From the IMG/VR virus record IMGVR_UViG_3300036715_004471, positions 1 through 64,000 of that record: a stretch of 64,000 bases of DNA. One strand, written 5' to 3'. Below the pieces are notes generated by a model. The model did not search any database. It saw only the letters and a program-made list of their open reading frames with translations, and had not been told where the DNA came from. Position numbers and translations under genes: made by a program. Below, in pieces: positions 8,543 through 60,780 of this stretch. Positions within the stretch are counted from its first letter, which is position 1. Each line of letters starts with the position of its first letter.

Positions 8543-10075
8543 TTATCCCTTTACCGTACACAACGGCATTAGTTTGGCAACAACTCTAGCAATACCAGCT
8601 TCCTCAACTGAGTTGATAACCGGAGTAATAGGCTTGTATGCGTAAGGAGCTTCTTCTTTGACTCTCTCCTTATACTTAGCCATGATGTCTTTTCTCATTT
8701 GCATCTGAGGAGATTTTGGATCCACAGATGTTACAATTCTCAATTCACTGGTTTGTTCATCGAAAATCTTATCAGAAACATGAGAGGCTTCTCCTCTTGG
8801 CATGATTCTGCCAGCTCCATGACAAGCACTCTCCAAAGCATCTGGATTACCCAAACCAGTCAATAGATAACTAGCGCTACCCATAGATCCAGGAATGATA
8901 ACAGGTTTACCAATCCACTTGTCTTCTCTATCTGGACCTTCTGCGGGAGTGGCTCCTTTGCGATGAATGAAGCTATCGCCCTTCTCAAAAACCAAATTGT
9001 GAGGAGCATCGTACACCAAACGAGCATCAACCTCAGATTTGATGACTTCTTGAATGGCTTTAATAGCCATCAACCCAAGAAACAATCTATTAACAAAAGC
9101 AAAATTTGCCGCATTTCTCATGCTGTTAAGATAAAAAATTCCTTCTTTTGCGTGCTCACCAATTGTTGGCAATACGAAAAAGTCATTCTTGGGAATTTTA
9201 ATTCCTTTAGGAAAGATTTCACGGGCACGATCAACGAAGTGCCATCCAACAGCATGACCCAAACTAACAGAGCCAGAATGAATCATGATTGCCAGATTAC
9301 CAGTATTGATATTCAACTCCATAGCAGTTTGCTTACAAAGAATCTCCTCAATCTTCTGGAACTCCACAAAATGATTACCACCCCCGACAGAACCAATCTG
9401 CGGGTCACGACCATCTTTGTTGCCAGAAGACTGGATCAATTTTTCAAAACCAAACAAACGGGTAGTATCGAAACCACCACCGTTGTGTGCTTTATCAAGA
9501 TCGTCTAGCTGAGCATTGGGATTAAAGAACTTATAAATACCAACCCCGGCATTATCTTCGCAAGTTTCCAATAGTCCTGGAAGACCATAACGAAGAACAG
9601 CCTCTCGTTGGCGAGGAGACATGGGAATATCTCTTTGACCTTGGAAGAAGATTTCTCTGAGGCGTTTCTGAATAGCGCCCCAATGCTCATCCAATTTAGA
9701 AACAGGAATATCCGTTACTAACAAACGCATACCACAACAGATATCATTACCAATAGCAGAAGGAATAACGAACCCTCTGTTTTCTACCACGGTTCCAATA
9801 GGAATGCCAGAACCTTTATGGAAGTCAGGGGTCAAAGCAACCTTTCTAATTCCGACATTTTGGTCGCCGAAAAAAGAAAAATTTCCGGACTTCTCTCCAG
9901 AGAGAATGTCGGAAATTGCGCGTTGAACATCTAGAAAATCGAAAAGCTCTTGAAATGCATCTCTATCAATTGCCACCTCTTCATTGGCGAAGAGTTTGAC
10001 GTCTAGATGCAAATTGTTATTGATTTGGCAGCAAGAACTAGAAATTCTATTAACTGACCATTCTGCGTTATACAT
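8543..10075 (-). CDS. rtcB: RtcB family RNA ligase
   Basis: PDFHKG, DICCGM, GGGNHFVE, HSGS, HN, HRKGAT, PGSMG, HGAGR, EEAPYAYK, VKG end. Confidence 0.95.
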   Translation of the reverse strand: MYNAEWSVNRISSSCCQINNNLHLDVKLFANEEVAIDRDAFQELFDFLDVQRAISDILSGEKSGNFSFFGDQNVGIRKVALTPDFHKGSGIPIGTVVENRGFVIPSAIGNDICCGMRLLVTDIPVSKLDEHWGAIQKRLREIFFQGQRDIPMSPRQREAVLRYGLPGLLETCEDNAGVGIYKFFNPNAQLDDLDKAHNGGGFDTTRLFGFEKLIQSSGNKDGRDPQIGSVGGGNHFVEFQKIEEILCKQTAMELNINTGNLAIMIHSGSVSLGHAVGWHFVDRAREIFPKGIKIPKNDFFVLPTIGEHAKEGIFYLNSMRNAANFAFVNRLFLGLMAIKAIQEVIKSEVDARLVYDAPHNLVFEKGDSFIHRKGATPAEGPDREDKWIGKPVIIPGSMGSASYLLTGLGNPDALESACHGAGRIMPRGEASHVSDKIFDEQTSELRIVTSVDPKSPQMQMRKDIMAKYKERVKEEAPYAYKPITPVINSVEEAGIARVVAKLMPLCTVKG

Positions 10076-10545: not shown

Positions 10546-10632
10546 TGGTAGCGCTGGTGGGACTCGAAACCACACGCCCACAAGGGGCAACGGATTTTAA
10601 GTCCGTAGTGTCTGCCATTCCACCACAGCGCC
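10546..10632 (-). tRNA. tRNA-Leu(UAA)
   Basis: GGCGCTG/CAGCGCT acceptor, ACGGA-CTTAAAA-TCCGT anticodon arm, long variable arm, TTCGAGT loop, encoded CCA. Confidence 0.93.
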
Positions 10633-15217: not shown

Positions 15218-15231
15218 AAATCCTTTATAGG

Positions 15232-15303
15232 TGGTTCCAAAGGGAATCGAACCCTTATAGCCGGGGTTAGAATCCGGCGCCCTAGCCGTTGGACGATGGA
15301 ACC
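15232..15303 (-). tRNA. tRNA with CUA anticodon (amber suppressor type)
   Basis: GGTTCCA/TGGAACC acceptor, GTCC/GGGC D stem, CCGGA-TTCTAAC-CCCGG anticodon arm, AAGGG-TTCGATT-CCCTT T arm. Confidence 0.85.
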
Positions 15304-16798: not shown

Positions 16799-17209
16799 TC
16801 AGTGATCATAGAGCTGTTCTGATTCAATGAGCTCATCACCAATCAGCTTGCAAGCCGTTTTGATCCGACTGTATCTACACATGTCCGCAAAGTCCATTTT
16901 GTAATCGATAAGATGTTTCATCATATCGAAACAGGCATTCTGCTCGATAGTAATAAAGTGATAGGTACCACTGAGAAATTCATATACATTGATTTTGAAC
17001 TTCTTTCCAAAATCATACTCATCTCCACCTGATCCGAAGCAAGGATCTTGCTCCGCATAATCCAGCTTGTAATGAGGATAACTATCAGTGTTTTCATCTT
17101 CACTAATGACTGCGCCAGTAAAGTCACAACGATACTCCTTAAATTCCCAAGTGGAATAAGGCTTGCCATTGTCGGAGCGATACTTAGTAACTTTCTCGTA
17201 GATTTTCAC
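16799..17209 (-). CDS. hypothetical protein
   Basis: 136 aa, GTGA overlap with upstream gene. Confidence 0.65.
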   Translation of the reverse strand: MKIYEKVTKYRSDNGKPYSTWEFKEYRCDFTGAVISEDENTDSYPHYKLDYAEQDPCFGSGGDEYDFGKKFKINVYEFLSGTYHFITIEQNACFDMMKHLIDYKMDFADMCRYSRIKTACKLIGDELIESEQLYDH

Positions 17210-18126
17210 GACACTTCCTTGTTTCTATGATTCTGGAAATAATCCAATAGTTTAATTTCACTGAAAGGAAATCTTTGTTCAGACGTACTAGATGGTGCAA
17301 ATTTTTGCTCCACACCATCAATGTACATAGTGAATACAAAGTCATCCCCCATATAAAATTTTGCCCAAGCATCTTCGGTGAAGAATCTTTGTAGATTCAT
17401 TTGCTTAATTGCAAGGTTGTCAAAAGAAAGAATCAAGCCTTTCTTCTTGAAATAAGTTGCCAAGGTAGTATACCATTGGTACTTATTCTCTTCAATTCTT
17501 TTGTTTCTTAAATAGTAGTTTAGACCAAATCCAAACACCTTATATCCAAGAACCAAGACCTTACAGGTGCGGTTGTATTCGGCACACAAAGAAGATAGAA
17601 TGTCAATGTCATGAACAGTATTGATACCCATGATCACATGGAACACGACACAATCAGTTGCCTCTAGGATAGGTTTAATATCCTCAATGTACGCGGGTGA
17701 AGAATAAGAAATCCCCACACCAAATACCAATTCATCTTTCACCAGATTCAAAATCAAATCTTTATATGGTTTGAGATGTTTTTGATTGATGGTGATATTG
17801 GGAATAATTCCTTTGGCGCGAAGCTCCCTCAAGAAAGGAATCAAGCCGGGATGGGAAAGTGGATTACCACCGCCGATAGCGATTTCAACGCCTGCCGGCA
17901 AAGACAAAAGAACGTTCAACAGAACATCCAAGTCACCATGCAATCCCTTAACAGTGGATTTCTCATGGCAAAAACTACACCCGGCATCGCAGTAATTAGT
18001 AATCTTTACGTCGATTGATTCCGGATGAGTCGGACTTGGAGTTCCGTCAAACGTTCTCTCTTTAGTTCCATCCTCGTACAGACACACACGCGTGTTACCG
18101 TTTTGATACGAGTGCAGGATATTCAT
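17206..18126 (-). CDS. radical SAM protein
   Basis: CDAGCSFC (CxxxCxxC), GGGNPL. Confidence 0.9.
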   Translation of the reverse strand: MNILHSYQNGNTRVCLYEDGTKERTFDGTPSPTHPESIDVKITNYCDAGCSFCHEKSTVKGLHGDLDVLLNVLLSLPAGVEIAIGGGNPLSHPGLIPFLRELRAKGIIPNITINQKHLKPYKDLILNLVKDELVFGVGISYSSPAYIEDIKPILEATDCVVFHVIMGINTVHDIDILSSLCAEYNRTCKVLVLGYKVFGFGLNYYLRNKRIEENKYQWYTTLATYFKKKGLILSFDNLAIKQMNLQRFFTEDAWAKFYMGDDFVFTMYIDGVEQKFAPSSTSEQRFPFSEIKLLDYFQNHRNKEVS

Positions 18127-20284: not shown

Positions 20285-20370
<86 letters not shown>

Positions 20371-21853: not shown

Positions 21854-22843
21854 TTACTCAAACAGATCGGAAACCGATCCACACCGATGAATTCTTTCAA
21901 TCGCCACACGCAGCATCATCGCACAAGATACAACTCTAATCTTTGCGGAAGCCTTAGCTTCCGCAGAAAGCGGAATAGAATCTGATACGATTACTTCTGA
22001 TAGTAGGGACTCATTGATTCTTTGAATTGCCGGACCAGAAAGTACCGCGTGTGTTGCGCATCCAATAACTTGGTTTGCACCAGCCTTCATTAGAGCGTCC
22101 CCGGCTTGACATAGAGTTCCAGTAGTGTCAATGATATCATCAACCAAGATACAATTCTTGTCAGCAATATCGCCGATGATATGCATTACTTCTGATTCGT
22201 TTGGTTTGTCTCTACGCTTGTCGATAATAGCTAGTCCACAACCACCAAGCTTTTTGGCAAAGTTTCTGGCTCGCTTTACACCACCAACATCAGGTGAAAC
22301 AACGACAGTATTGTGAGGTTGCCAATCTTTATAGTTATGAGAAAGATCGTAGCACAAGAACGGCGCGGACTGAAGGTTGTCGAACAGAGGAGTTTCAAAG
22401 AATCCCTGAATCTGGGTAGAATGAACATCCAGAATAGCAACTCTATCAACGCCAGACTTGATAATCAAACCGCTTACCAACTTCGCAGTGATGGGTGTCC
22501 TCGGCGCAACCTGTCTATCTTGACGAGCATATCCATAGTAAGGAATAACTGCGGTCACAGAATCGGCAGCTGCTCTCTTCAAAGCATCTGCCATAATGCA
22601 CATCTCCATAATATTGTCGTTATGGGGCGCACAGGTAGACTGCAAAATATAGCAATCCATTCCTCTGACAGATTCTTTGATGGAGAAGAATGTCTCTCCA
22701 TCAGAAAAATGACTAATGACACCCTGACCTCGTGTCGGTGGAGCCGGAAAACCAACCAGCTTATCCACCTCATGATAATCAAAGAATTTATCGAAAAGCT
22801 CCGGATTGGAGCGTCCCACGAAAACCCTGATGTCACTATTCAT
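21854..22843 (-). CDS. prs: ribose-phosphate pyrophosphokinase
   Basis: FSDGE, PYYGYARQDR, DVHSTQIQGFF, VVSPDVGGVKRA, DKRR, DDIIDT. Confidence 0.95.
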   Translation of the reverse strand: MNSDIRVFVGRSNPELFDKFFDYHEVDKLVGFPAPPTRGQGVISHFSDGETFFSIKESVRGMDCYILQSTCAPHNDNIMEMCIMADALKRAAADSVTAVIPYYGYARQDRQVAPRTPITAKLVSGLIIKSGVDRVAILDVHSTQIQGFFETPLFDNLQSAPFLCYDLSHNYKDWQPHNTVVVSPDVGGVKRARNFAKKLGGCGLAIIDKRRDKPNESEVMHIIGDIADKNCILVDDIIDTTGTLCQAGDALMKAGANQVIGCATHAVLSGPAIQRINESLLSEVIVSDSIPLSAEAKASAKIRVVSCAMMLRVAIERIHRCGSVSDLFE

Positions 22844-22844
22844 A

Positions 22845-23915
22845 TTATCTTCCATTCTGATGAGACCAGCCAGAATCAATCTCCAGATCTAAATCCCTGG
22901 CGATACAAGGCAAATAGATAGTAGAAATATGTTCCAATTCTGACATGTTAGAAGCCGTTCTCAAATCATGTGAACCGTATTCGCCAAGAGATATAACGTA
23001 TCCGGGATCTCTCAAATCACCGTAAATTCCATTATGTTGATAGCCTTTGCTATAATCACGATCTTGACCCATGTTAAAACCGCGGGCTCGGTAATACTCT
23101 AGGCTTGGTCGCTGAGGATATTGCGAATGATCATCTGCCAATTCCTCATGAGATTCCACCCGGTCCAGCACAGTCTTTACGAAATCATCTGGAGACATAC
23201 CGCCTTCCTTCTGACCTCGTAGAAGCACATTGTTCAGCTGTGTTTTGGTGAGCTTGCCGGCAACCAACTCTCTCAGTTCATTTACGTAATTATCATGAGC
23301 CTGATGCGTTCTCTTCTCATTGAGAATCATATCAATGTGCTCAAAATCTTTTCCTAGAACCTTGGCGTAAAGCTCTTGAATATCTTCCACCCGCCACTTG
23401 CCCTGTGTTGATTCGTAGCTCCTCCAAATTCTTCTAACGTGGAAGTGATGTCGTTCTCTATCGTATCTAGCAGTAGGCATCTGCGTGTACACGTACATGT
23501 AATCGCGACATTGATTGGTATGAATTATCACTTTAGTGTTAGGGTTCGCGGCTGGAAGCCAGAACACATCGCCATCGGCGTCTCCATACATCAAAGAGTT
23601 TTCTTCATCATGACCTTTATCTACTAAGGCTTGATGAATAGCCACCACATGAGGAATCATGATCTTTTTGACAACCAAAGTCCAATAAGCATCAATGTCC
23701 CAATTCAAATAAAGAGAGCCACAGGTCTGTTCAAAATATTTTTTGGCAAAAGCTTCTCGAGCTTTATCTTCATCTGAAGAGTGTCGATCTTCCCAAGACT
23801 CATCCTCGAAAAATTCAAATGGTTCCTGAACCATTTGAGCAGAGTTGAATGGCTCTTTTCTTTTTTGTTCCAACTGCTTAATGGCAAGTTTTGCCAATAA
23901 CTCTTCTCTCTTCAT
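22845..23915 (-). CDS. hypothetical protein
   Basis: 356 aa ORF. Confidence 0.7.
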   Translation of the reverse strand: MKREELLAKLAIKQLEQKRKEPFNSAQMVQEPFEFFEDESWEDRHSSDEDKAREAFAKKYFEQTCGSLYLNWDIDAYWTLVVKKIMIPHVVAIHQALVDKGHDEENSLMYGDADGDVFWLPAANPNTKVIIHTNQCRDYMYVYTQMPTARYDRERHHFHVRRIWRSYESTQGKWRVEDIQELYAKVLGKDFEHIDMILNEKRTHQAHDNYVNELRELVAGKLTKTQLNNVLLRGQKEGGMSPDDFVKTVLDRVESHEELADDHSQYPQRPSLEYYRARGFNMGQDRDYSKGYQHNGIYGDLRDPGYVISLGEYGSHDLRTASNMSELEHISTIYLPCIARDLDLEIDSGWSHQNGR

Positions 23916-27487: not shown

Positions 27488-28882
27488 TCAGTAGATGATT
27501 TTGTTTTCGAACTTGTGACTGCCGAACTTTTCGTTGATGGTACGCCACACATTTTTACCATCACCCTCCGAATGCTCAATCCATTTTCCATTCATGGTCC
27601 AAGCAGTGGTCATGTCGCCAAGGTCATTTACCAAGGTGCCGATACCATTTTGGAAAACATCCCAGATGATATCTCTTGCTTTTGCCGGGGGAATGTCGCT
27701 TGACAGATCAGGCACGCCAGCAGCTGCACCGCCATTGCAAATTGGCCAAGCCGCCTGAAACAACTTCATCATGATATCTTTGTTTCTATTCATGATGGCG
27801 CGAGACTTATCAACATCCAAATCCATCATACAGGAAATGACTTCATCTTCGGATGTGTCCCAGAATTTTCCAAGATCCTTCTTACCCAGAATGACACACT
27901 TGCGCGCAAAATCATACACCAAGTTAGCAACCATCGGATGAATTAACCAGGAATTACTCAGAGCATGATATTCAAGCCCTGAACCAGTGACCTTGTAATC
28001 ACCGGGCAGGCTTCCCAGTTTGCTGTAATCTGGATGATTATATCCGTTCAGCAAAGACACGCACGCGCATCCAAGCGTAGCATCCAACACTTTGGTGATC
28101 GATGATGCTCTCTCATCTGAGAGCCCGCGGAAATCATAAAGATGAAATTGAATTGCTCCACGAGCGGTACGATATCTGATCGTTTTAGCATCAGGGCACC
28201 TCGAACTTGCGCTATCAATTCTCTTGATACCGTAAGCGTTCTTAATATCTGAACCAATTCCAAACGCAAGAGTCTGAACGTCAGCCTCCGCAAGCTGCTT
28301 GTCAGACAAAACCATTACTGATTTGTTGGAGATTCTTGCCTTGGGATCAACCTTTCGAGCCGAGGCATACATGTCATGCAGTCCAAATGCCATCGAATCA
28401 ATGGCGCGGGCGAGGCAAACACAAGAGGCGGTCTGAACTGCACCGCCAAATCCAATGCGAGATGCTGTCACCTTACCATCATAACCCGGAGACTTAACCT
28501 GATCTTTCGCAATGAGAAACGTAGCGGGGACGCAAGCGCCATTCTCATCCTCCAAAAAGAATTCTCCCATAGCGGCATTGTCACCGTTATGATCTAATTC
28601 ATTGTGAAGATTCGAAAATCTATGTTTATCCCTAGCAGCAACGTGTTCAACCATTTCAGAGTCATCAAGAACGGTCAAGGCGGCGTCGTCAACAAGATAG
28701 TTGGCATACGACGTACCATCGAGGTACGTTACTGTCACGTAAATTTCATCGTGACCGTAATCTTGAATGGACGTAACCAAAACGGTATCATGGGCAAACT
28801 TACCTTTGTTCGCCAGCTTGACACCAATGTTGCGACGATTCTTAACCCAATCGTTCACCAACTCACGTGCGTTCGTAATCAT
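27488..28882 (-). CDS. degenerate phiEco32-like COOH-NH2 ligase paralog
   Basis: Aligns by eye to 62749..63993 (NAYG, LDATLGCACVSL, LPGDYK, LEYHALSNSWL) but lacks several catalytic residues. Confidence 0.75.
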   Translation of the reverse strand: MITNARELVNDWVKNRRNIGVKLANKGKFAHDTVLVTSIQDYGHDEIYVTVTYLDGTSYANYLVDDAALTVLDDSEMVEHVAARDKHRFSNLHNELDHNGDNAAMGEFFLEDENGACVPATFLIAKDQVKSPGYDGKVTASRIGFGGAVQTASCVCLARAIDSMAFGLHDMYASARKVDPKARISNKSVMVLSDKQLAEADVQTLAFGIGSDIKNAYGIKRIDSASSRCPDAKTIRYRTARGAIQFHLYDFRGLSDERASSITKVLDATLGCACVSLLNGYNHPDYSKLGSLPGDYKVTGSGLEYHALSNSWLIHPMVANLVYDFARKCVILGKKDLGKFWDTSEDEVISCMMDLDVDKSRAIMNRNKDIMMKLFQAAWPICNGGAAAGVPDLSSDIPPAKARDIIWDVFQNGIGTLVNDLGDMTTAWTMNGKWIEHSEGDGKNVWRTINEKFGSHKFENKIIY

Positions 28883-30004: not shown

Positions 30005-30220
30005 TTACGGCTCCAAGTCATCGTCATCATCCTCTTGAATATCCAAGACTTTGGAAGTGATTGTTCTTCGATCTTTGTCTCGAAGAATATTCAACGGGGA
30101 GCCTATGATAGGCTCTTCATAAAACCCGAAGTATGTTTTCCATTCACCTACTTTTGGTTTGATGCGCCTGTACCGACCATCATCAAACTCATAAGTGGAA
30201 TTTTTTGTTATCACTATCAT
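30005..30220 (-). CDS. hypothetical protein
   Basis: TKNSTYE..TSKVLDI. Confidence 0.6.
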   Translation of the reverse strand: MIVITKNSTYEFDDGRYRRIKPKVGEWKTYFGFYEEPIIGSPLNILRDKDRRTITSKVLDIQEDDDDDLEP

Positions 30221-30400: not shown

Positions 30401-31414
30401 TCAGTCCATCTGACCATAATATCCGCGGTAATAAGCTGCAAGCTCTTCGTCATCCTCTACTTCGCTCTTGTCACCCTTCACCTCGGTCTTATCATCTTTC
30501 TTCCAAGATGAGGGGTAAGGAGAGTATGCTCCAGAACCAGTGGTACAGCTGCCACCGTAGCTATCGCCAGGAACTTTGGTTTCCACTACCGCCTCTTCGT
30601 CAATCTCATCATTAGCGGGTTTGACAGTCACGACGGTAGAGGTAGAGGAAGAATGATCGGTCCGGCTCTTGGTGTACTTGTTGTAGTAACCAACCTGGAT
30701 TCCACTCAGCTTGGTCTTGAACACACCATCGGCACGAATGCGATACACTCTGCCAATCTCATCGATCTTGAACTCACGATCGACTTCCAGGTCTGCAACC
30801 TTGAGCGCCTCGCGCACAATCTTCCAGGTAGAACCCCATACCACGCCGCCACCCTTGACCGAAACTACGCAGATATCAGAATGCTGCGAGAGACGGCACA
30901 GGTTGACATAGCCGCGATGATCAGTGTCGATCCAAGTAACTACGCCGTAACCCACCATCTCGCGGATGCCATCGTAGTTCTTATCAGCCAAGAGTTCGAA
31001 AATCTCCTGACTATCGACATTGATGTCTCGACCATTCTGCTTGGCAGACTTGAAAGCATCCGGAACCATCCCGTTATGGGCGCCCCACATGACCACCCTC
31101 CCGCCGCGACGAATCGCAAACGGATGTGCGTTCATAGGATCTTCACGACTACCACACGTAGCGAAACGTGCGTGCATCAAGCAGACGTCTCCAGCAGCGC
31201 CTTCAACGAAACGAACTCTTGCTCGGAGCCACGTTCCCTTCTTGCGTGCATACTTGACATCATCAGCTTCGCCATCCTTAGTGGAGAAAGTGACGCTGGC
31301 ATAACCGCAGCTATGCCCACCGCGACCGTCGATGCCATCCCCGAGACCGAGGATGAGCATCAACTTATCTTCCGCCGCAATGTCCAATCCGATGTATCCA
31401 GACAATCCACACAT
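30401..31414 (-). CDS. class II (Ntn) glutamine amidotransferase
   Basis: N-terminal MCG, RGGHSCG, HARFAT, AHPF, HNG, VDSQ. Confidence 0.9.
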   Translation of the reverse strand: MCGLSGYIGLDIAAEDKLMLILGLGDGIDGRGGHSCGYASVTFSTKDGEADDVKYARKKGTWLRARVRFVEGAAGDVCLMHARFATCGSREDPMNAHPFAIRRGGRVVMWGAHNGMVPDAFKSAKQNGRDINVDSQEIFELLADKNYDGIREMVGYGVVTWIDTDHRGYVNLCRLSQHSDICVVSVKGGGVVWGSTWKIVREALKVADLEVDREFKIDEIGRVYRIRADGVFKTKLSGIQVGYYNKYTKSRTDHSSSTSTVVTVKPANDEIDEEAVVETKVPGDSYGGSCTTGSGAYSPYPSSWKKDDKTEVKGDKSEVEDDEELAAYYRGYYGQMD

Positions 31415-31416
31415 GA

Positions 31417-33477
31417 TTAGTACACGTACTTTCCGCCCTTGAGGCTAATGAGGCGCTGAGCGAGTCCATTTCTTCTCGACGTCTCGTGACGCCATTCTTT
31501 CACTCTTGACATGATCCACGGCGCAAGCTCGGGAGCCACGTTCTGACAAAGGATCCTGAGCGGAGACTTCGGCAGATTTTCCAGATCCTTATCGGTAGAC
31601 TTGGCTGCCCAATCCACCAACCTCACCATCAACTTCGCCCAATTGATAACGCGCTGGGCGTCAGTCGTATTGGGATGAATTCTGAACTCCACCGTAGTGT
31701 CCGGCGCGATAGTTCTCTTGTTGACGATAAGAAAACGACCAGGAACAAGCTTGGCGCCCTGTTTGGTCTTATTCCATCTCATCAGGGCTGCCACCGAAAC
31801 ACCATGGCGCTGTGCGATCTTCTCTAGCGAATCGCCATTCAAGATGGGAACATTGACCGGGGTTCTCGGTCTCGGACCACGCCCCGCCAACCACGGAAGG
31901 ATGTTGAGACCCTTGCGACGGCAGTAGGGATGGTTATCAGCACGACGACCAGGCTTTTCTTTCTGGGCATCTTTACCGAAACCGGGAGACATGTTGACCT
32001 CACTCTTGCGACCCTCACGAGTCAAAGTGGTGAAGGCAACAGACATGATGGCATCCTTCTTATCAGTTCGTTCCAGGGCAGCAGCATATTCTTTGCCGAT
32101 CGGCACAGCGTATCTGTTACCCAAGCGCTCCTGTCCTGCAATCAGGTACAGGATGGGCTCGACCTTCGAGTAGACCGTCAAGAAGCGAAACATGTCCGCC
32201 CATTGAAGATCCTTGGCGTCCACGTGAGTGTGAATCGAACAACGATTGTCAACTCGGACTCGGCTCTTCTCGAACACCTTGCCCAAAGATTCAATACACT
32301 TGACCAGATAATCGCCAGCCACGGGAGCGGTAACCGCCTCGTAACCGCACGAATCATCACGATGAAGGTCGCTCAACCACCGTCTACACCAGTGATCAAC
32401 GTATCGGTTAGTGGAAAGCGAATTGTACTCCCACTCAATACCAGCGAATCGGTTGCAGTCGAACTGCTTACGTTCCGTCTTTTTGAAAGCGGGGAACGTC
32501 TTGCCGAACGGACCATTCGTTCGAGCAGCGACACAAGAGCAATGATCCAGACAGTTGTGGCAGTCTTCACACTCCTGCATCTCCTGGCAACCGGCGCTGG
32601 GACAAAGCACACACGCGCAGCAACCAGAACATCTCCAACAGTAACGGCACACTCTTTCCTGATGAGAGTTGCACGAATGGCAATGAAAGTGCGGGTTGCC
32701 GGGGCGACCAGTACCAACAGTGGCTCCCAATCTGCAACACTCTCCGCAGAATCCGCACGCAGAAACTTCATGCGACTTGGGCACGCCAGCACCAGCCGGA
32801 ACAATCGGATAGGTACAGTGAGGACAATGTGAGTGGGACTCGAATCCCACCATCGCATTACAATCCACACACCATCGGTAAGTGTAGTTCGAGGCATTGG
32901 TATGAGTGCCAACGTAATCTCGGAGCCCCGCCTTATCAATGTCGGTAGCAGAAGGATCGTTGTCGATCACCTGCAATGCGCTGAAAGCGTTATCTCGATT
33001 GGACAGGTCAGGAAAGTATCTGTCCGTGAGAGCAGGATAACGTCTCACCAACTGATCGTAATTCATATCTCGTCTCGGTTCGGGTTCCCTTGGTTGATTC
33101 ATTCCAGGCACATCATGTGCTAGAATCCTTCTCGCCGCTTCTTGAAAATCTTCGAGGCTGATGGGCGTCGGCGGTGGGTAAGCAGGTACAGCCCTCGCAA
33201 AGGGATTAGCTTCCACCACCGGTGCTTGAGCAATAGGCTGAGGTTCTGCAAAGAAATTGCGCCTCCACTCATTTAGCGGATTAACACGTCGAGCGCCGTC
33301 CGCAACAGCCCGCATTCGATTGCGAAATGCCTCAAGCCGAATCTGCGCATCGTGCAGTTGCTCGTGCTCTCGCTCTCGCACGAATTGGTAATTGTCTACC
33401 TCGATCTCATCGAAGATCCTTCGATCTTCTTCAATCGTCAATTCCTCCGCCCCAATTGTATCTTCTTTGTTCAACAA
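31417..33477 (-). CDS. amidoligase (GS/GCS-like) with Cys-rich region and inserted LysM domain
   Basis: GIEWE, YEAVTAP, CSIHTHVD, TVEFRIH; LysM GDSLEKIAQRHGVSVAALMRWN; start uncertain. Confidence 0.85.
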   Translation of the reverse strand: MLNKEDTIGAEELTIEEDRRIFDEIEVDNYQFVREREHEQLHDAQIRLEAFRNRMRAVADGARRVNPLNEWRRNFFAEPQPIAQAPVVEANPFARAVPAYPPPTPISLEDFQEAARRILAHDVPGMNQPREPEPRRDMNYDQLVRRYPALTDRYFPDLSNRDNAFSALQVIDNDPSATDIDKAGLRDYVGTHTNASNYTYRWCVDCNAMVGFESHSHCPHCTYPIVPAGAGVPKSHEVSACGFCGECCRLGATVGTGRPGNPHFHCHSCNSHQERVCRYCWRCSGCCACVLCPSAGCQEMQECEDCHNCLDHCSCVAARTNGPFGKTFPAFKKTERKQFDCNRFAGIEWEYNSLSTNRYVDHWCRRWLSDLHRDDSCGYEAVTAPVAGDYLVKCIESLGKVFEKSRVRVDNRCSIHTHVDAKDLQWADMFRFLTVYSKVEPILYLIAGQERLGNRYAVPIGKEYAAALERTDKKDAIMSVAFTTLTREGRKSEVNMSPGFGKDAQKEKPGRRADNHPYCRRKGLNILPWLAGRGPRPRTPVNVPILNGDSLEKIAQRHGVSVAALMRWNKTKQGAKLVPGRFLIVNKRTIAPDTTVEFRIHPNTTDAQRVINWAKLMVRLVDWAAKSTDKDLENLPKSPLRILCQNVAPELAPWIMSRVKEWRHETSRRNGLAQRLISLKGGKYVY

Positions 33478-33627: not shown

Positions 33628-34368
33628 TTAGAGGCTCAGAAAAGCCTGAGCGTATCTGGTAGCCGTAGTTTCGCAAAGTCCCGGAGCAGTGTTGACCTCC
33701 AAGACCCACATTCTGTTGGAACGGGTATTGGCAACGATATCGACTGCTCCGAAGAGCAAGCCGAGAGCCTGAACTGCTCTCACGCCAAGATCACGAAGAC
33801 CCTGCGGCTCAACGATTCCATTGCGACAGAACACCCACTGATTGTCGATGTTCCTAATCAAACCATCAGGTCTGGAACCATCGGCGTTACGCGCACCGTT
33901 GCGGCGACGCTTCTCCTGCAAGTCAATGACGACACCATTACAGGCATGAACTCGGAACTCCTTGTCCTTCTCAACCAGCTTCACATACAAAGGAGCCTCG
34001 ACGATGGGAAGCTGGCGGCAGATCACAATTCCACGACCCTCGGAGCCATTGAGAATCTGTCGAGCTACCACCACGATACCACTGCGAACCCACCCCTCTG
34101 CAACAGCCTTGGAGGTAGTGTACTCCGGAATCGAAACGCCCGCCGTAGACAGCTTGTTGAGAGTACTGAGCTTGTTCTTAGCGATGGCGATCCCCGCCGC
34201 CGGCTGAAGATTCACCAGAGGAACGTTGGCGTTCCCCCAAAGAATGTTTCGATGATCGTAACTCGCATCACCAGAAACAACCCTCTTGCCACTGATCTCA
34301 GTCATCTTCGCAGCAAGGAGCTTGGCTCCCTCACTGGTCTTCTTGTACGGAACGATTCGATAAGCCAT
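33628..34368 (-). CDS. phiEco32-like ATP-grasp ligase
   Basis: NKL, GSEGRGI, EFRVH, FGAVDI, VLEVNTAPG. Confidence 0.9.
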   Translation of the reverse strand: MAYRIVPYKKTSEGAKLLAAKMTEISGKRVVSGDASYDHRNILWGNANVPLVNLQPAAGIAIAKNKLSTLNKLSTAGVSIPEYTTSKAVAEGWVRSGIVVVARQILNGSEGRGIVICRQLPIVEAPLYVKLVEKDKEFRVHACNGVVIDLQEKRRRNGARNADGSRPDGLIRNIDNQWVFCRNGIVEPQGLRDLGVRAVQALGLLFGAVDIVANTRSNRMWVLEVNTAPGLCETTATRYAQAFLSL

Positions 34369-35192: not shown

Positions 35193-36101
35193 TCAATTTC
35201 CAGTTTTGTGTGGCTTGACCACTCCAGACGCCAGACCGATCTGAAACCGTTCCCAATAGTTACTAGGATACAATTTCAAACAGTCCAAAGCATTTTCGTA
35301 AGCGAATGCTCTCCACCATCCAGAAGAAATGCTGGTGCATACTTTGGAAAGTGAAAGCCGCCATGCTTTCTCAGGCGTCATCTTCCCGGGATGGGGAACC
35401 AGACTTCGTTCAATCGCAAGTACCGCAGACTCTTCCACTACGGAATAGAGCTGAATCTCGCGGGGACAAGCGAAGAACTTGTTCTTATCACAGAGGACTT
35501 CGGCACCATCTTTTTGAAAGTAAGTATAAGCCGGACGATCCGCCAACGCAACAGTGGCATGAATCGAATCATGATCGTAAACGTATCCCACACCATCCTC
35601 ACTGAAGAAGTCTGCTTTGCCGACATTCAGTTTAGGATGATTATAGGTATAAGTTTCCTTCTCACGCATCTTATGAAACTCCTCGAACTCCGGACGAACC
35701 TTGGCTCCTACCATCTTCATCAGATGATAATCAGAAAGGTTCTTCCAGAAATGAGGAGAGTTCCTCAGATACTTGTGAGAGGACTTGATAGTGAACAGCA
35801 TGTCCAGGCTAGGAACCAACCCGAACGGCGTGCTCATGGTATCAGGATCTTCCACAACCAGTTGGAGCAGAAGTTCGGAACTTCTGCTGGGATTAATCAA
35901 CTCAAACTCACAGTTGACTGCCCCGCGCACCACTCGTTTGGTGGGCGTAATCTTAATGTTGATGGGACCAACCCGACCGGACTGTTCAAGGATCCAGCTG
36001 CTGTATTCTGCTTCGGTGCAAACCCAATCGAAGTCCTTGGGCTCACGATGAAGAAGAAATGGTGCCCGAAACTTCAAAGCTCTGCTTCCGATCAGGATCA
36101 C
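35193..36101 (-). CDS. phage protein with polymerase-beta-like nucleotidyltransferase N-terminus
   Basis: LIGSRAL..PKDFDW (GS..DxD); IKSSH, YDHDSIH, SGWWRAF; GTG start after GGAG. Confidence 0.65.
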   Translation of the reverse strand: MILIGSRALKFRAPFLLHREPKDFDWVCTEAEYSSWILEQSGRVGPINIKITPTKRVVRGAVNCEFELINPSRSSELLLQLVVEDPDTMSTPFGLVPSLDMLFTIKSSHKYLRNSPHFWKNLSDYHLMKMVGAKVRPEFEEFHKMREKETYTYNHPKLNVGKADFFSEDGVGYVYDHDSIHATVALADRPAYTYFQKDGAEVLCDKNKFFACPREIQLYSVVEESAVLAIERSLVPHPGKMTPEKAWRLSLSKVCTSISSGWWRAFAYENALDCLKLYPSNYWERFQIGLASGVVKPHKTGN

Positions 36102-36705
36102 GACAACTTTTCTCCATTTGGAATGCGTGGATTTTCTCAACCCATACTAAAAAATCATGTACTGATCTAGTCAGTTTTGCTTTGTTACAATCTTCGCAAG
36201 ATGGGACAACGTTATCCCTATCATGGTTTAATAGACTATTTATTCTATCTAATCCATTATAGATGAAATCTCCATCTTGAATCCTTTGTTTTGAGAACCT
36301 GCTGTTAGCATATTTATACGCATTGTACGTATTTTTAGGCTCATCTCCACAATAGAAACATTTTTCTTGCGATAACACTACAAATTCTTCAAATGATAAG
36401 TTGCCATCTGAATATCTGTCAGTGAAAATCTTTTTGGCTGAACCTAATCTTGGCTGCAAGCCGGGACGGGCTCGCTGCGCCTTCTTTAGGTTAATTTTAA
36501 CTGACTCTACATTAAGACACCCACAACTCTTGGTTTTGCCCGTCTTAACATAGGATAGCCTTATATTTAAGACCGTTCCACAATCGCAAACACATTCAGA
36601 CAAAACATGACCATCATTTGTACGAGAGGTCAGAATTTTCTGTATTGTAAGACGATTGAATTGTTTTCCTATTAGTTCTCGTGCCGATTTTATATGCCTA
36701 TTCAT
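36043..36705 (-). CDS. HNH-type homing endonuclease (related to 1529..2083)
   Basis: FNRLT..CDCG..SCGCL; CFYCG; NGLDRINS..NVVPSCEDCNKAK. Confidence 0.85.
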   Translation of the reverse strand: MNRHIKSARELIGKQFNRLTIQKILTSRTNDGHVLSECVCDCGTVLNIRLSYVKTGKTKSCGCLNVESVKINLKKAQRARPGLQPRLGSAKKIFTDRYSDGNLSFEEFVVLSQEKCFYCGDEPKNTYNAYKYANSRFSKQRIQDGDFIYNGLDRINSLLNHDRDNVVPSCEDCNKAKLTRSVHDFLVWVEKIHAFQMEKSCRDPDRKQSFEVSGTISSSS

Positions 36706-39409: not shown

Positions 39410-39963
39410 GTATCTTCTCCTTCGGAAAGTAGGGGGTGTGCTTCGTACTCGGAACCCAGAGAAACGACAGAGAAGTCTACCAGATTTTGGGTTCTTCTGT
39501 TTCTAAATCTGTAAACATCCAACCACCCATTTCGTTGCAGAACCTTGTTCTGCGCACTATTAGTGGTTACATGCGTACAGAAAAGAACAGTGTAGCCTCT
39601 ATCTCTGGCGATAGCTCTTCTAAACTTGCCAAGGATAGTGCCAACACCTTTGTTGCGGTAATGGGAGAAAACTTTCTCTCCAGTCGACATGCAAACGCCA
39701 CAGCATCCGCGCAACTGACAAAGAACAAACTCCGCGATTTCCGCCTTGGTATCGGCGTCACGAATAACGAAACCAGCCCCCTCTTCAGACTCGATGAATC
39801 TGGTGTTTCGATTATTCAGCGGCTCCAGATTGTCGAAGCGCTTTGAAGGAGTGATCAAGATCTCCACACGATTGATCTTCAGAGTGCGTCGAATCTCTTC
39901 ACAACACTCTTTCGCGTATGCGGGAACCTGAGTGAGTCTAGCCCAAATACTGTCGTTACTCAT
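39322..39963 (-). CDS. GNAT-fold acetyltransferase
   Basis: VFSHYRNKGVGT (motif A), N..Q..VLQRNGW; paralog of 59172..59960. Confidence 0.75.
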   Translation of the reverse strand: MSNDSIWARLTQVPAYAKECCEEIRRTLKINRVEILITPSKRFDNLEPLNNRNTRFIESEEGAGFVIRDADTKAEIAEFVLCQLRGCCGVCMSTGEKVFSHYRNKGVGTILGKFRRAIARDRGYTVLFCTHVTTNSAQNKVLQRNGWLDVYRFRNRRTQNLVDFSVVSLGSEYEAHPLLSEGEDTCLSIESLSWKLASSNRRTSWYSWLFTPP

Positions 39964-40609
39964 GTTTTTCCTTAGCAGCATCTTGCGCCGTATGTACTGC
40001 ACGGATCAGATCCACTTGACTCCTCAAAACAAACATGATGTTACGATACACATCGTATTGTCGAGGGTGCTTCTTACGAGCCGACTTCAACATCGGCAAA
40101 ATTCGGTTGGTGGTTTCTTCCAGATATCCATCCTGCTTATCTCTGGAAAAGACAGGGACGATGGTACTCTGGTTGTGGATTCTATCTGACCCCTTGACTA
40201 CCGAAGAAATGGGATCATCTTCCATATCAAGGAAGTAGACTTCTGGATCAATCTTACGACCACGATGGGTCTTGGTGACCAACTCAGTGGCGCGCGAGAT
40301 TCGAGTGCTGAATCTTGAATCCAATTCCTTGAAACCAACATCGTAATCTTCCGGGCAATCATGCAAGAAAGATACGGCAATGGTTTCTTCCGGAAACATC
40401 AGACCACTAGAGAGTGTCAGAAGATATCCAGCAATCTCAATCTGATGGTAAAACTCCGGGGTGATCTTGTCTTTTCTGGTCCCCTTATGAAAACCAAGAG
40501 CGAACTCCATGGCTTCCAATGCAGTGAACCAACCTTTGCCCAAGAGAGTGTGTCTAACGGCGATGGTGTGTCTCTGGTATCTGTCCAGAATAACTTCTGC
40601 TGATTCCAT
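39956..40609 (-). CDS. HD-domain (p)ppGpp hydrolase-like protein (SpoT-HD/Mesh1 type)
   Basis: H.GTRKD..PEFYH, LHDCPED, VTK, VKGSDRIHN. Confidence 0.85.
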   Translation of the reverse strand: MESAEVILDRYQRHTIAVRHTLLGKGWFTALEAMEFALGFHKGTRKDKITPEFYHQIEIAGYLLTLSSGLMFPEETIAVSFLHDCPEDYDVGFKELDSRFSTRISRATELVTKTHRGRKIDPEVYFLDMEDDPISSVVKGSDRIHNQSTIVPVFSRDKQDGYLEETTNRILPMLKSARKKHPRQYDVYRNIMFVLRSQVDLIRAVHTAQDAAKEKHE

Positions 40610-40642: not shown

Positions 40643-41644
40643 TTACTTCTTCATCTGACTGAGATACCAACCGCGAGCTTTATCGCCGACTGGTTTCTGA
40701 ACCTGCTTCCAATCCAATCCAGAAGCCTCAAGCTCATCTTGGTTTTCCTTCTGAACATCCGTAGCAATCCAGCCAAGGAACTTGCCAATGAGCTTCTGAT
40801 TGAAAGTCAGAGAACCATCATCAGAAACCGCCCGAGCCCCCTGCTCCAAACGCGCCATAGTCAGCACCATACCAGCAAACAGATTGGCATTCTCAGCCGA
40901 TTCTGCATTGACCTGAGCAGCAACCTTTGCCTTGACAACACGATGGGCTTCACCCTTCGCCTTAAAAACAAGGTTGCAATAGTTGGCATAACCAAGATGT
41001 TCGACAGAAGTTGGATAGAAAACCAATCCTTCTCCAGTGCCCTTGATACCGAAAGTAGAATCTACCCACGGATCATTCTGCTCTACCGCCATAACCCATT
41101 CGTTGATCAACGAAGTTTTCGCAGATAGAGTCTCATCACTAGCCGACCAGTCTACTTGGATTGGATCGTTATGCCATGGCAGAATATGAATGCCAAGCTC
41201 CGAAGCAACTGGCGACAAAAGATCAGCCAAATGAGTAGGCTCAGAAATAAGAACGCCGTCTTCCGTATTCAGAGAGCGAGCAGCAAACAAAGCAAAAACC
41301 TTATCATTAAGCTGCTCAAGTGCAACTCCGCTTTGAATACCCTTGCCGCACCACTCGCCATACAGGATAAAACCATTGGCATTAGAAGCTAGAAGGGGAG
41401 CCTTGATTGTCTCGACCCACTTAGCAAAACCTTTATTATCTTTTTCAGGAGTAAGAACAACGCCTCTACTCTGACAAACGATACTTCCATCGTTATGAAT
41501 TTGAATTGCATGATTCTCTCCATGCAACTTAACCTTACCACGATAGGTAACGATCGGATAGCCGTTCAAAATATCAGGAACAGAAACAGCATACTTTCTG
41601 ATATTATGGAAGCCTTCGATTTCGGTCCAGGGAATGACAGCCAT
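40643..41644 (-). CDS. ATP-dependent RNA ligase (Rnl2-like)
   Basis: KLHGEN, QSR, YGEWCG, GEGLV, FKAK. Confidence 0.85.
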   Translation of the reverse strand: MAVIPWTEIEGFHNIRKYAVSVPDILNGYPIVTYRGKVKLHGENHAIQIHNDGSIVCQSRGVVLTPEKDNKGFAKWVETIKAPLLASNANGFILYGEWCGKGIQSGVALEQLNDKVFALFAARSLNTEDGVLISEPTHLADLLSPVASELGIHILPWHNDPIQVDWSASDETLSAKTSLINEWVMAVEQNDPWVDSTFGIKGTGEGLVFYPTSVEHLGYANYCNLVFKAKGEAHRVVKAKVAAQVNAESAENANLFAGMVLTMARLEQGARAVSDDGSLTFNQKLIGKFLGWIATDVQKENQDELEASGLDWKQVQKPVGDKARGWYLSQMKK

Positions 41645-60593: not shown

Positions 60594-60699
60594 ACAATGA
60601 AACTCAACCTCCATAAAACTGGCTCACGTAGATAGAATGCTTTTAAGGCATTACCTATGAACCAACAAGCATATTGTTAATCTCGCAAAAATCTTAGCA

Positions 60700-60780
60700 T
60701 CGCTTGTGTGGACTCGAACCACATAGCCTAAGCACCTCACTTAAAATGCGAGGCGACTCTCCCAGGAGTCAAACAAACGA
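60700..60780 (-). tRNA. embedded atypical tRNA-like element (UUU loop)
   Basis: TCGTTTG/CAAGCGA, GACTC/GAGTC, CCTCGC-ATTTTAA-GTGAGG, TGTGG-TTCGAGT-CCACA. Confidence 0.6.

What the first reader, a model, noticed from the sequence alone, without database searches (positions are those of the whole stretch)
31725..31855. LysM domain inserted inside the amidoligase catalytic domain
Seen: NVPILNGDSLEKIAQRHGVSVAALMRWNKTKQGAKLVPGRFLIV lies between the GLNI motif and the TVEFR strand, which are normally close together. A long CxxC-rich region (about 32540-32875) precedes the catalytic core. Known: LysM binds GlcNAc polymers such as peptidoglycan. Inference: this is direct sequence evidence that the system's substrate is a peptidoglycan precursor or fragment. 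With no signal peptide, cytoplasmic lipid II or muropeptides are the likelier targets.
Basis: partly seen in the sequence, partly recalled or inferred. Interest (0 to 1): 0.75.

Follow-up and report, generated by a model that had tools for sequence, protein, structure and literature searches.

The report
LysM nested in phage amidoligase
A giant phage from microbial mats carries an ATP-dependent amide-forming enzyme with a genuine cell-wall-sugar-binding LysM module spliced into its catalytic domain, which gives a new but indirect clue that a widespread, unexplained phage enzyme set acts on peptidoglycan or a similar envelope glycan.

Summary
Window 31417-33477 (- strand) encodes a 686-aa protein. 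It has an acidic, variable N-terminus, a 116-residue stretch with 23 Cys and 10 His, and a glutamine-synthetase-fold Amidoligase_2 domain. The Pfam profile for that domain is split in two by a canonical LysM (35.9-40.9 bits against a 20.9 cut-off). In the model the LysM has the beta-alpha-alpha-beta fold and overlays the AtlA LysM at 1.5 A.

The LysM sits in the hairpin between the GLNI and TVEFR active-site strands. Of 167 relatives, 101 have no insert there and 16 have the LysM. Those 16 belong to one narrow clade of uncultured large phages, several on contigs of about 450 kb.

The gene belongs to the known phiEco32-type module: ATP-grasp, amidoligase, class II glutamine amidotransferase and COOH-NH2 ligase type 2. 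That module had already been proposed to modify host peptidoglycan.

- The LysM is circumstantial evidence, not direct evidence.
- LysM-less orthologues sit in the same module.
- Single LysM modules bind glycan chains of four or more sugars and bind disaccharide-peptides poorly, so lipid II or muropeptides are not obvious ligands.

This is a new variant of a known kind and of moderate interest.

The parts
31417..33477 (-). Whole gene: 686-aa Cys-rich / Amidoligase_2 / nested-LysM protein (TTG start)
   Evidence: ORF list; Pfam Amidoligase_2 E 8e-11 and LysM E 7e-9; 26 full-length homologues
33076..33477 (-). Residues 1-134: acidic, Pro-rich N-terminal region that varies in sequence and length; no signal peptide
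   Evidence: Poorly conserved and gap-rich in alignment A1; hydropathy scan
32893..33075 (-). Residues 135-195: conserved small helical region ahead of the Cys-rich domain
   Evidence: Conserved block in A1; four helices with pLDDT 93-98 in model mbf8bc8e102a4
32533..32880 (-). Residues 200-315: Cys/His-rich, presumably multi-zinc domain (23 Cys, 10 His, eight CxxC)
   Evidence: Counts; 19 Cys columns at least 90% conserved across 71 relatives; at least 14 Cys in the equivalent region of 88 relatives; model pLDDT 87; no significant PDB fold match, best E 0.39
31879..32460 (-). Residues 340-533: first part of the Amidoligase_2 (GS/GCS2-fold) catalytic domain. It holds the ExE, DxSCGxE and HxHxD motifs and R520/N525, and ends in GLNILPWLAGR
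   Evidence: Pfam profile 73-190; invariant residues across 101 sequences; Foldseek YbdK/GCL/GS/Dop probability 0.98-0.99; AFDB amidoligase clusters E 2e-11
31708..31878 (-). Residues 534-590: inserted LysM module with its two linkers (Pfam core 547-585 = nt 31723-31839)
   Evidence: Pfam; clean indel in alignments; beta-alpha-alpha-beta at model residues 221-265 with pLDDT about 95; 2mkx TM 0.81, rmsd 1.5 A; matches to 4uz2, 1e0g and 2mkx LysM sequences
31420..31707 (-). Residues 591-686: second part of the catalytic domain (DTTVEFRIH strand with invariant D593, T595, E597, R599, H601, then C-terminal helices)
   Evidence: Pfam profile 209-244; invariant columns; model
30401..31414 (-). Class II (Ntn) glutamine amidotransferase, 337 aa, with a low-complexity acidic C-terminal tail; starts 3 nt downstream of the amidoligase stop
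   Evidence: GATase_6 E 6.5e-7 and phrog_14519 E 4e-14; invariant C2, R31, R83, N114, G115, D134 in 58 sequences; adjacent to the amidoligase in L001, L003, L004 and L005
33628..34368 (-). RimK-like ATP-grasp ligase, 246 aa, immediately upstream
   Evidence: phrog_2599 E 3.6e-59; 35-42% identical homologues in 313 isolate phage records, and every named host in the listing is Gram-negative; syntenic in L001, L003 and L004
27488..28882 (-). phiEco32-like COOH-NH2 ligase type 2 (GCS2-like), 464 aa
   Evidence: phrog_3815 E 2e-6; Atlas feature score 0.93 to PF14395 clusters; a 456-490-aa protein in the same position in L001, L003 and L004
35193..36140 (-). DUF7277/DUF7275 protein: a syntenic neighbour upstream of the ATP-grasp gene; membership of the module uncertain
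   Evidence: Pfam E 3e-63; same position in L001, L002 and L003; present in 735 phage records
30005..30220 (-). 71-aa ORF ending in an acidic tail (…EDDDDDLEP) just downstream of the GATase; a possible peptide substrate, uncertain
   Evidence: Translation, and a conserved counterpart with an acidic tail in L001 only

Best explanation
The gene encodes a cytoplasmic ATP-dependent carboxylate-amine ligase (Amidoligase_2, glutamine-synthetase/GCS2 fold). It is the amidoligase member of the phiEco32-type phage module of ATP-grasp ligase, amidoligase, class II glutamine amidotransferase and COOH-NH2 ligase type 2.

In one narrow clade of uncultured aquatic and microbial-mat large phages (several on contigs of about 450 kb), a canonical peptidoglycan-type LysM was captured into the tip of the beta-hairpin that joins two active-site strands (R520/N525 and E597-x-R599). 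Other family members carry unrelated inserts in the same loop.

The most likely role of the LysM is as an accessory recruitment or positioning module. It would hold a GlcNAc-containing envelope glycan next to the active site. The most likely ligand is a peptidoglycan precursor or nascent strand; otherwise another GlcNAc-bearing lipid-linked oligosaccharide. The amidoligase would activate a carboxylate as an acyl-phosphate and amidate it with ammonia released from glutamine by the adjacent amidotransferase. The two other ligases would add further amide-linked residues. The result would be an edited cell envelope, for example to exclude superinfecting phages.

Shown: the domain identities, the insertion site, the intact catalytic motifs, the clade distribution, membership of the module, and the absence of export signals.
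Inferred: glycan binding, the identity of the substrate, the amidation chemistry and the biological purpose.
For: LysM is above the Pfam cut-off and is the only LysM in the genome. The model has pLDDT 94.4 and pTM 0.91 with a beta-alpha-alpha-beta insert. The insert overlays AtlA LysM at TM 0.81, rmsd 1.5 A and 43% identity, and the core matches YbdK/GCL/GS/Dop at probability 0.98-0.99. The best solved-sequence matches are all cell-wall LysMs: 4uz2, MltD 1e0g and AtlA 2mkx. Within the clade the LysM positions A, S, N and G are invariant and the D/E-T/S pair ahead of helix 1 is conserved; these match the canonical LysM motif as I know it from general knowledge. The insertion splits the Pfam profile between positions 190 and 209 and lies within about 3-5 residues of invariant active-site residues. 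The 14 LysM+ rows fall in one 16-row clade with identical insertion borders, retained down to about 50% identity. All four module enzymes are present and syntenic. GATase catalytic residues are invariant. The module was previously proposed to modify host peptidoglycan (PMC6256558 and PMC10580990, citing Iyer 2009 and Hardies 2013). Every named host of the phages with the related ATP-grasp in the listing is Gram-negative.
Against: LysM-less orthologues work in the same module, so LysM is dispensable for the core reaction. A single AtlA LysM needs at least 4 sugars and binds disaccharide-peptides at over 1 mM or not at all (PMC4083421), and polymerised glycan lies outside the membrane, where there is no ATP. 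No other cell-wall domain was found in 84 diverse relatives; pentapeptide-repeat and Kelch fusions occur instead. No neighbouring gene is envelope-related, and the genome has no Mur ligase. The amidoligase-GATase complex prediction gave no answer.
Confidence: 0.45

Rival explanations
1. The LysM binds a GlcNAc-containing envelope intermediate other than peptidoglycan, built on the cytoplasmic face of the membrane. Candidates are undecaprenyl-PP-linked O-antigen, capsule or ECA repeat units, or chito-oligosaccharides. The module would amidate or aminoacylate uronic-acid carboxylates, a seroconversion-like change.
For: LysM recognises GlcNAc-X-GlcNAc in several polymers, not only peptidoglycan (PMC4083421). 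Lipid-linked oligosaccharides of 3-5 sugars are cytoplasm-accessible, which resolves the topology problem. Linked peptide ligases of these families have been associated with O-antigen and teichuronopeptide synthesis (PMC4431377). Jumbo phages are thought to modify capsule and peptidoglycan to block rival phages (PMC7824862).
Against: The best sequence matches of the insert are peptidoglycan hydrolase LysMs. No glycosyltransferase or sugar-nucleotide genes were seen nearby. The host and its surface glycans are unknown.
Confidence: 0.15
2. The LysM is not a glycan binder here. It serves as a structural lid, a regulatory element or a protein-protein contact in a loop that tolerates insertions, as LysM does in the K+-binding protein Kbp.
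For: The loop is an insertion hot spot, with 1-42-aa unrelated inserts in about 50 relatives. LysM was lost, or never gained, in two nested lineages. Kbp is a BON-LysM protein that binds K+ (papers listed, not read; that it is cytoplasmic is from my own knowledge). High pLDDT and pTM are compatible with the LysM being packed on the core.
Against: Motif residues are conserved, and the insert is 43% identical to a proven peptidoglycan-binding LysM. There is no sign of degeneration.
Confidence: 0.2
3. The module modifies a protein or peptide or makes a small peptide metabolite: RimK-like tailing of an acidic C-terminus, Pup-like tagging, or a glutathione-like product. The LysM would only localise the enzyme near sites of wall synthesis, or would be incidental.
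For: The ATP-grasp is RimK-like, phrog 'ribosomal protein S6 glutaminyl transferase'. The fold is shared with the Pup ligase PafA/Dop. A 71-aa ORF with a conserved acidic tail lies inside the module in the window and in L001. Other family members carry pentapeptide-repeat or Kelch protein-interaction domains. The large conserved Cys-rich domain looks like a macromolecule-binding module.
Against: The acidic-tail ORF is not conserved in L003 or L004. Under this reading the retention of a canonical LysM next to the active site has no explanation.
Confidence: 0.15
4. The module takes part in hypermodification of phage DNA bases. Amidoligase and amidotransferase genes co-occur with thymidine hypermodification clusters.
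For: Co-association has been reported in viral metagenomic contigs (PMC8989533). A radical SAM gene lies 13 kb away.
Against: The whole 446.5-kb genome has no 5-hmdU DNA kinase (HMUDK_hel) and no thymidylate-synthase-family dUMP hydroxymethylase. LysM has no known nucleic-acid role.
Confidence: 0.05

Closest known systems
phiEco32 / LUZ24 / PA11 / phiRIO-1 / phiM6-type phage 'peptide-bond' module (Iyer et al. 2009): COOH-NH2 ligase type 2, Amidoligase_2, Gn_AT_II, ATP-grasp
   Same: The same four enzyme families are clustered on one strand. The amidoligase is homologous to the 285-aa isolate-phage enzyme (hhalign 98.6%, E 1e-15) with the same motif order. The function is uncharacterised in both, and host peptidoglycan modification has been proposed.
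   Different: Here the amidoligase is 686 aa, with a multi-zinc Cys-rich N-domain and a LysM nested in the catalytic hairpin. The gene order differs. The carrier is an uncultured large phage with a 446.5-kb genome rather than a 45-77-kb podophage. No AIG2/GGCT-like gene was seen in the module.
Peptidoglycan-binding LysM modules: E. coli MltD (1e0g), E. faecalis AtlA (2mkx), T. thermophilus NlpC/P60 (4uz2/4uz3)
   Same: Sequence matches at E 4e-7 to 7e-5. Fold TM 0.81, rmsd 1.5 A and 43% identity to 2mkx. The same conserved motif positions.
   Different: Those modules are terminal, often repeated, and belong to exported wall hydrolases. This one is a single copy nested inside the catalytic domain of an ATP-dependent enzyme with no export signal.
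MurT/GatD lipid II amidotransferase (and AsnB/LtsA-type mDAP amidation)
   Same: Proposed chemistry: ATP-activated stem-peptide carboxylate plus ammonia from a partner glutaminase. This resemblance comes from established knowledge and is functional only.
   Different: MurT has a Mur-ligase fold and GatD is a class I amidotransferase. Here the ligase has a GS fold and the amidotransferase is class II. This is an analogue, not a family member, and no Mur ligase is found in the genome.
YbdK/GCS2, glutamine synthetase, PafA/Dop carboxylate-amine ligases
   Same: Shared fold (Foldseek probability 0.98-0.99) and the metal/ATP-binding Glu, His and Arg motifs.
   Different: TM is only about 0.35 and identity about 10%. 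These are different families with different substrates, and none carries a nested LysM.
Kbp (YgaU), a BON-LysM potassium-binding protein of E. coli
   Same: A bacterial LysM-containing protein whose known ligand is K+ rather than a glycan (papers listed, not read). That it is cytoplasmic is from my own knowledge.
   Different: It has no enzymatic domain, and its LysM is terminal and acts with BON in K+ binding.

Membership tests
LysM (PF01476) | Profile match above the curated cut-off | tested here: met
   35.9 bits and 40.9 bits against a cut-off of 20.9
LysM (PF01476) | beta-alpha-alpha-beta fold | tested here: met
   Strand-helix-helix-strand at model residues 221-265, pLDDT about 95; 2mkx TM 0.81, rmsd 1.5 A
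LysM (PF01476) | Conserved ligand-site motif positions (Asp-Thr/Ser ahead of helix 1, Ile-Ala, Asn after helix 2; motif as I know it from general knowledge) | tested here: met
   Alignment of 14 clade members and HMMER alignments to 1e0g, 4uz2 and 2mkx
LysM (PF01476) | Binding of GlcNAc-containing glycans | not testable with these tools
   Needs a binding assay. The ligand list of the complex predictor has no sugars.
Amidoligase_2 (PF12224), GS-like carboxylate-amine ligase | Profile match above the cut-off | tested here: met
   42.7 bits against 22; the match is split in two pieces by the LysM
Amidoligase_2 (PF12224), GS-like carboxylate-amine ligase | GS/GCS2 fold | tested here: met
   Foldseek 1tt4, 1r8g, 2gwc and GS at probability 0.98-0.99; AFDB amidoligase clusters E 2e-11, TM 0.56
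Amidoligase_2 (PF12224), GS-like carboxylate-amine ligase | Catalytic motifs intact (E348/E350, H416/H418/D420, R520/N525, E597/R599) | tested here: met
   Invariant across 22 and 101 sequences
Amidoligase_2 (PF12224), GS-like carboxylate-amine ligase | ATP-dependent amide-bond formation | not testable with these tools
   Needs an enzymatic assay
phiEco32-type phage amidoligase module | Co-clustered RimK-like ATP-grasp | tested here: met
   phrog_2599 E 3.6e-59; homologues in 313 phage records
phiEco32-type phage amidoligase module | Adjacent class II (Gn_AT_II) amidotransferase with an N-terminal Cys | tested here: met
   GATase_6; invariant C2, N114, G115, D134
phiEco32-type phage amidoligase module | COOH-NH2 ligase type 2 (PF14395) | tested here: inconclusive
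   No Pfam hit at E 0.1 or below, but phrog_3815 E 2e-6 and Atlas feature score 0.93 to PF14395 clusters
MurT/GatD lipid II amidation system | Mur-ligase-fold synthetase plus class I glutaminase | tested here: not met
   The fold is GS-like, the GATase is class II, and the genome has no Mur_ligase_M
Thymidine hypermodification cluster | 5-hmdU DNA kinase and dUMP hydroxymethylase in the genome | tested here: not met
   No HMUDK_hel and no Thymidylat_synt match in the 446.5-kb genome

The most novel reading that the evidence does not exclude
A phage-encoded cytoplasmic peptidoglycan-editing machine. The embedded LysM would dock the disaccharide or a short nascent glycan of lipid II-type precursors at the mouth of a glutamine-synthetase-fold active site. 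The four-enzyme module would then amidate or aminoacylate stem-peptide carboxylates. This would rewrite the host wall during infection, and it would reveal the long-unknown function of the module carried by phiEco32-, LUZ24- and PA11-like phages.
Probability: 0.3. Interest if true: 0.75.

Novelty: new variant of a known kind. Interest (0 to 1): 0.5.

Why it matters
The ATP-grasp / amidoligase / amidotransferase / COOH-NH2 ligase module is carried by hundreds of isolated phages, including phiEco32-like coliphages and LUZ24-like Pseudomonas phages. It was first noted in 2009, and none of the papers found or read here reports a measured function.

A canonical wall-binding module spliced next to the active site in one clade is the first domain-level clue to the substrate class. 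It agrees with the older, purely contextual proposal of peptidoglycan modification. It also turns a vague hypothesis into specific binding and activity assays.

A carbohydrate-binding LysM nested inside a catalytic domain of an ATP-dependent cytoplasmic enzyme is also an unusual architecture in its own right.

Tried and rejected
- Megablast of the 9.5-kb module against 50,697 phage records found nothing. tblastn of the amidoligase found only two 25%-identical metagenomic records. The subfamily is therefore absent from isolates.
- The amidoligase + GATase complex prediction returned 'no answer' and is not used either way.
- Model coordinates were not exposed to the script box. The distance and orientation of the LysM groove relative to the active site could not be measured.
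- A word-indexed protein search restricted to the LysM segment returned only the nearest orthologue, so it gave no clue to the donor of the LysM.
- Whole-genome family searches for Terminase_6N/6C and Gp23 found nothing. The phage lineage and host remain unassigned. Sequencing-run look-up places the phage in microbial-mat, sediment and aquatic metagenomes.
- The DNA-hypermodification reading is rejected as unlikely, with no HMUDK and no ThyA-family gene.
- The export/periplasmic reading is rejected: there is no signal peptide or membrane segment, and the chemistry needs ATP.
- Iyer 2009 and Hardies 2013 could not be read. Their proposals are cited second-hand.
Full report
WHAT IS THERE

The finding lies in ORF 31417-33477 on the - strand (686 aa, TTG start).

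Pfam gives Amidoligase_2 (E 8e-11, 42.7 bits, cut-off 22) and LysM (residues 547-585, E 7e-9, 35.9 bits, cut-off 20.9). The window is the first 64 kb of a 446,541-bp single-contig virus record. In a six-frame search of that genome this is the only LysM (40.9 bits, E 1.1e-10) and the only Amidoligase_2.

The amidoligase profile is matched in two pieces. Profile positions 73-190 lie at nt 32011-32352 and positions 209-244 at nt 31618-31722. The LysM (31723-31839) abuts the second piece. It is therefore a nested domain, not a fusion at a terminus.

IS THE INSERTION REAL AND UNUSUAL?

A search of 5.8 billion proteins found 26 full-length relatives. In their alignment the LysM block is a clean indel between GLNI(L/C)PWLAGR and APDTTVEFR(I/M)H.

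An exhaustive HMMER search of 1.84 billion representatives found 4475 relatives at E 0.001 or below. I anchored 167 of the retrieved sequences on an HMM of the catalytic domain. Of these, 101 have no inserted residue at this junction. About 50 have 1-42 unrelated, mostly basic residues. Sixteen have the 47-52-aa LysM.

A classical 285-aa amidoligase from an isolated Alcaligenes phage aligns to the family profile (hhalign 98.6%, E 1e-15). It has only about three residues between the two motifs. The loop is also a general hot spot for insertions.

STRUCTURE

An AlphaFold2 model of residues 321-686, built on 101 sequences, has mean pLDDT 94.4 and pTM 0.91. The insert forms strand-helix-helix-strand at model residues 221-265, with pLDDT about 95.

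Foldseek against the PDB matches the core to YbdK, plant glutamate-cysteine ligase, glutamine synthetases and Dop (probability 0.98-0.99, TM about 0.35). It matches the insert to the E. faecalis AtlA LysM 2mkx (TM 0.81, rmsd 1.5 A, 43% identity). AFDB clusters named amidoligase match at E 2e-11.

By sequence, the best solved relatives of the insert are LysMs of wall enzymes: T. thermophilus NlpC/P60 (4uz2, E 4e-7), E. coli MltD (1e0g, E 4e-6) and AtlA (E 7e-5). Within the clade the Ala, Ser, Asn and Gly positions of the LysM motif are invariant and the Asp/Glu-Thr/Ser pair is conserved.

Invariant residues in the catalytic domain are intact across 101 sequences: E348/E350, D374/S376/G378/E380, H416/H418, R520/N525 and T595/E597/R599. 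D420, D593 and H601 are invariant in the 22-sequence alignment and at least 90% conserved in the larger one. The insertion point is within a few residues of N525 and T595/E597. By chain topology the LysM must therefore sit at the edge of the active-site sheet.

REST OF THE PROTEIN

- Residues 1-134 are acidic, Pro-rich and variable.
- Residues 200-315 hold 23 Cys and 10 His, with eight CxxC motifs.
- Nineteen Cys columns are at least 90% conserved in 71 relatives, and 88 relatives have at least 14 Cys in the equivalent region. This is a hallmark of the subfamily and is not linked to LysM.
- The model of this region (pLDDT 87) has no significant PDB fold match (best E 0.39).
- No 19-residue window exceeds a Kyte-Doolittle mean of 1.08, so there is no signal peptide or membrane segment.

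CONTEXT

All neighbouring genes are on the same strand:
- a RimK-like ATP-grasp (33628-34368; phrog_2599, E 3.6e-59)
- the amidoligase
- a class II glutamine amidotransferase (30401-31414), with invariant Cys2, Asn114-Gly115 and Asp134
- three small ORFs
- a 464-aa protein (27488-28882) that matches phiEco32-like COOH-NH2 ligase type 2 (phrog_3815, E 2e-6; Atlas feature score 0.93).

This is the phage module described by Iyer et al. 2009. The ATP-grasp has 35-42% identical homologues in 313 isolate phage records, and every named host in the listing is Gram-negative. An Alcaligenes phage shows the classical order: COOH-NH2 ligase type 2, hypothetical protein, amidoligase, Gn_AT_II, ATP-grasp.

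The expanded version is syntenic in a 447.7-kb contig (LysM+, L001), a 34-kb contig (LysM+, L004) and a 214-kb contig (LysM-, L003). A 72-kb soil contig keeps only amidoligase and GATase.

On a tree built without the insert columns, the 14 LysM+ rows lie in one 16-row clade with two LysM-less rows nested (P0013, P0015). The minimum is 2 changes, and 0 of 500 label shuffles were as clustered. Because the insertion borders are identical, one gain followed by losses is the simplest history.

The phage is found in microbial-mat, sediment and aquatic metagenomes.

INTERPRETATION

[quoted passage not shown] I found no paper that mentions a LysM in these amidoligases. The LysM is therefore new and independent support for that older proposal, but it is circumstantial support.

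1. LysM-less orthologues sit in the same module, so LysM is an accessory.
2. For AtlA, a single LysM module needs at least four sugars. Muramidase-released disaccharide-peptides did not bind, and (GlcNAc-MurNAc)2-peptides had Kd over 1 mM (PMC4083421). Lipid II, UDP-MurNAc-peptide and muropeptides would be weak ligands. Polymerised glycan lies outside the membrane, where ATP is absent. A weak subsite next to an active site could still be useful, but that is inference.
3. Of 84 diverse relatives, none carries another wall-binding domain; pentapeptide-repeat and Kelch fusions occur instead. No neighbouring gene is envelope-related, and the genome has no Mur ligase.

The rivals are:
- another GlcNAc-bearing lipid-linked glycan as the ligand
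- a non-glycan structural or regulatory role for the insert
- protein or peptide modification, where a 71-aa ORF with an acidic tail inside the module is a candidate substrate but is conserved only in L001
- DNA hypermodification, which is unlikely because the genome lacks HMUDK and ThyA-family genes.

The amidoligase-GATase complex prediction gave no answer.

VERDICT

This is a new architectural variant of a known but functionally unsolved phage module: a nested LysM plus a multi-zinc N-domain. It is of moderate interest because it yields concrete assays for a module present in hundreds of cultured phages.

Noticed in passing
window 15230-15303 (-); also 10546-10632, 20285-20370, 60699-60780: ARAGORN calls a tRNA with anticodon CTA (labelled Pyl), which is a potential amber-suppressor tRNA. 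It also calls two tRNA-Leu(TAA) and one tRNA-Lys(TTT). I did not check whether TAG is recoded anywhere in this large phage genome.
   Followed up: no
window 21854-22879 (-) and 22845-23915 (-); 5258-6448 (-): A PRPP-synthetase-family gene (Pribosyltran_N, Pribosyl_synth) is followed by an overlapping 356-aa gene with no family match. A 396-aa protein has a cytidylyltransferase-like nucleotide-binding motif. From my own knowledge, this arrangement recalls phage NAD+ reconstitution pathways. I did not test that.
   Followed up: no
window 8543-10075 (-), 40643-41644 (-), 39956-40609 (-), 17206-18126 (-), 2136-3350 (-), 36043-36705 (-): RNA-repair and auxiliary genes surround the module: RtcB (E 2e-92), an RNA ligase, an HD-type phosphohydrolase, a radical SAM protein, an AAA ATPase and an HNH/endonuclease VII-like protein. 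Peptide deformylase and IleRS lie next to the module in related contigs.
   Followed up: partly
window 1-64000: G+C rises steadily from 0.34 at the start of the window to 0.56 at its end, with negative GC skew throughout. IMG/VR labels the 446.5-kb record 'provirus' although CheckV rates it 100% complete.
   Followed up: no
window 30005-30220 (-); L001 13133-13348: A 71-aa ORF just downstream of the amidotransferase ends in a run of Asp/Glu. The tail is conserved in the 447.7-kb relative but not in L003 or L004. It is a possible substrate for the RimK-like ATP-grasp.
   Followed up: partly
window 32533-32880 (-): The Cys/His-rich domain (about 19 conserved Cys) is modelled with confidence but has no fold match in the PDB. 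It is found in at least 88 relatives and may be an undescribed multi-zinc domain.
   Followed up: partly
relatives P0021, P0022 and others; P0077, P0084, P0096, P0111: Some family members replace the N-terminal region with pentapeptide repeats (6 of 84) or Kelch repeats. Others carry 30-42-aa non-LysM inserts in the same hairpin loop. The loop and the N-terminus look like interchangeable targeting positions.
   Followed up: partly
window 35193-36140 (-): A DUF7277/DUF7275 protein (phrog_2141) lies immediately upstream of the ATP-grasp gene in the window, L001, L002 and L003. It has homologues in 735 phage records, the best being Myxococcus phage Mx1 and Ralstonia jumbo phage RsoM2USA. Its function is unknown.
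   Followed up: partly
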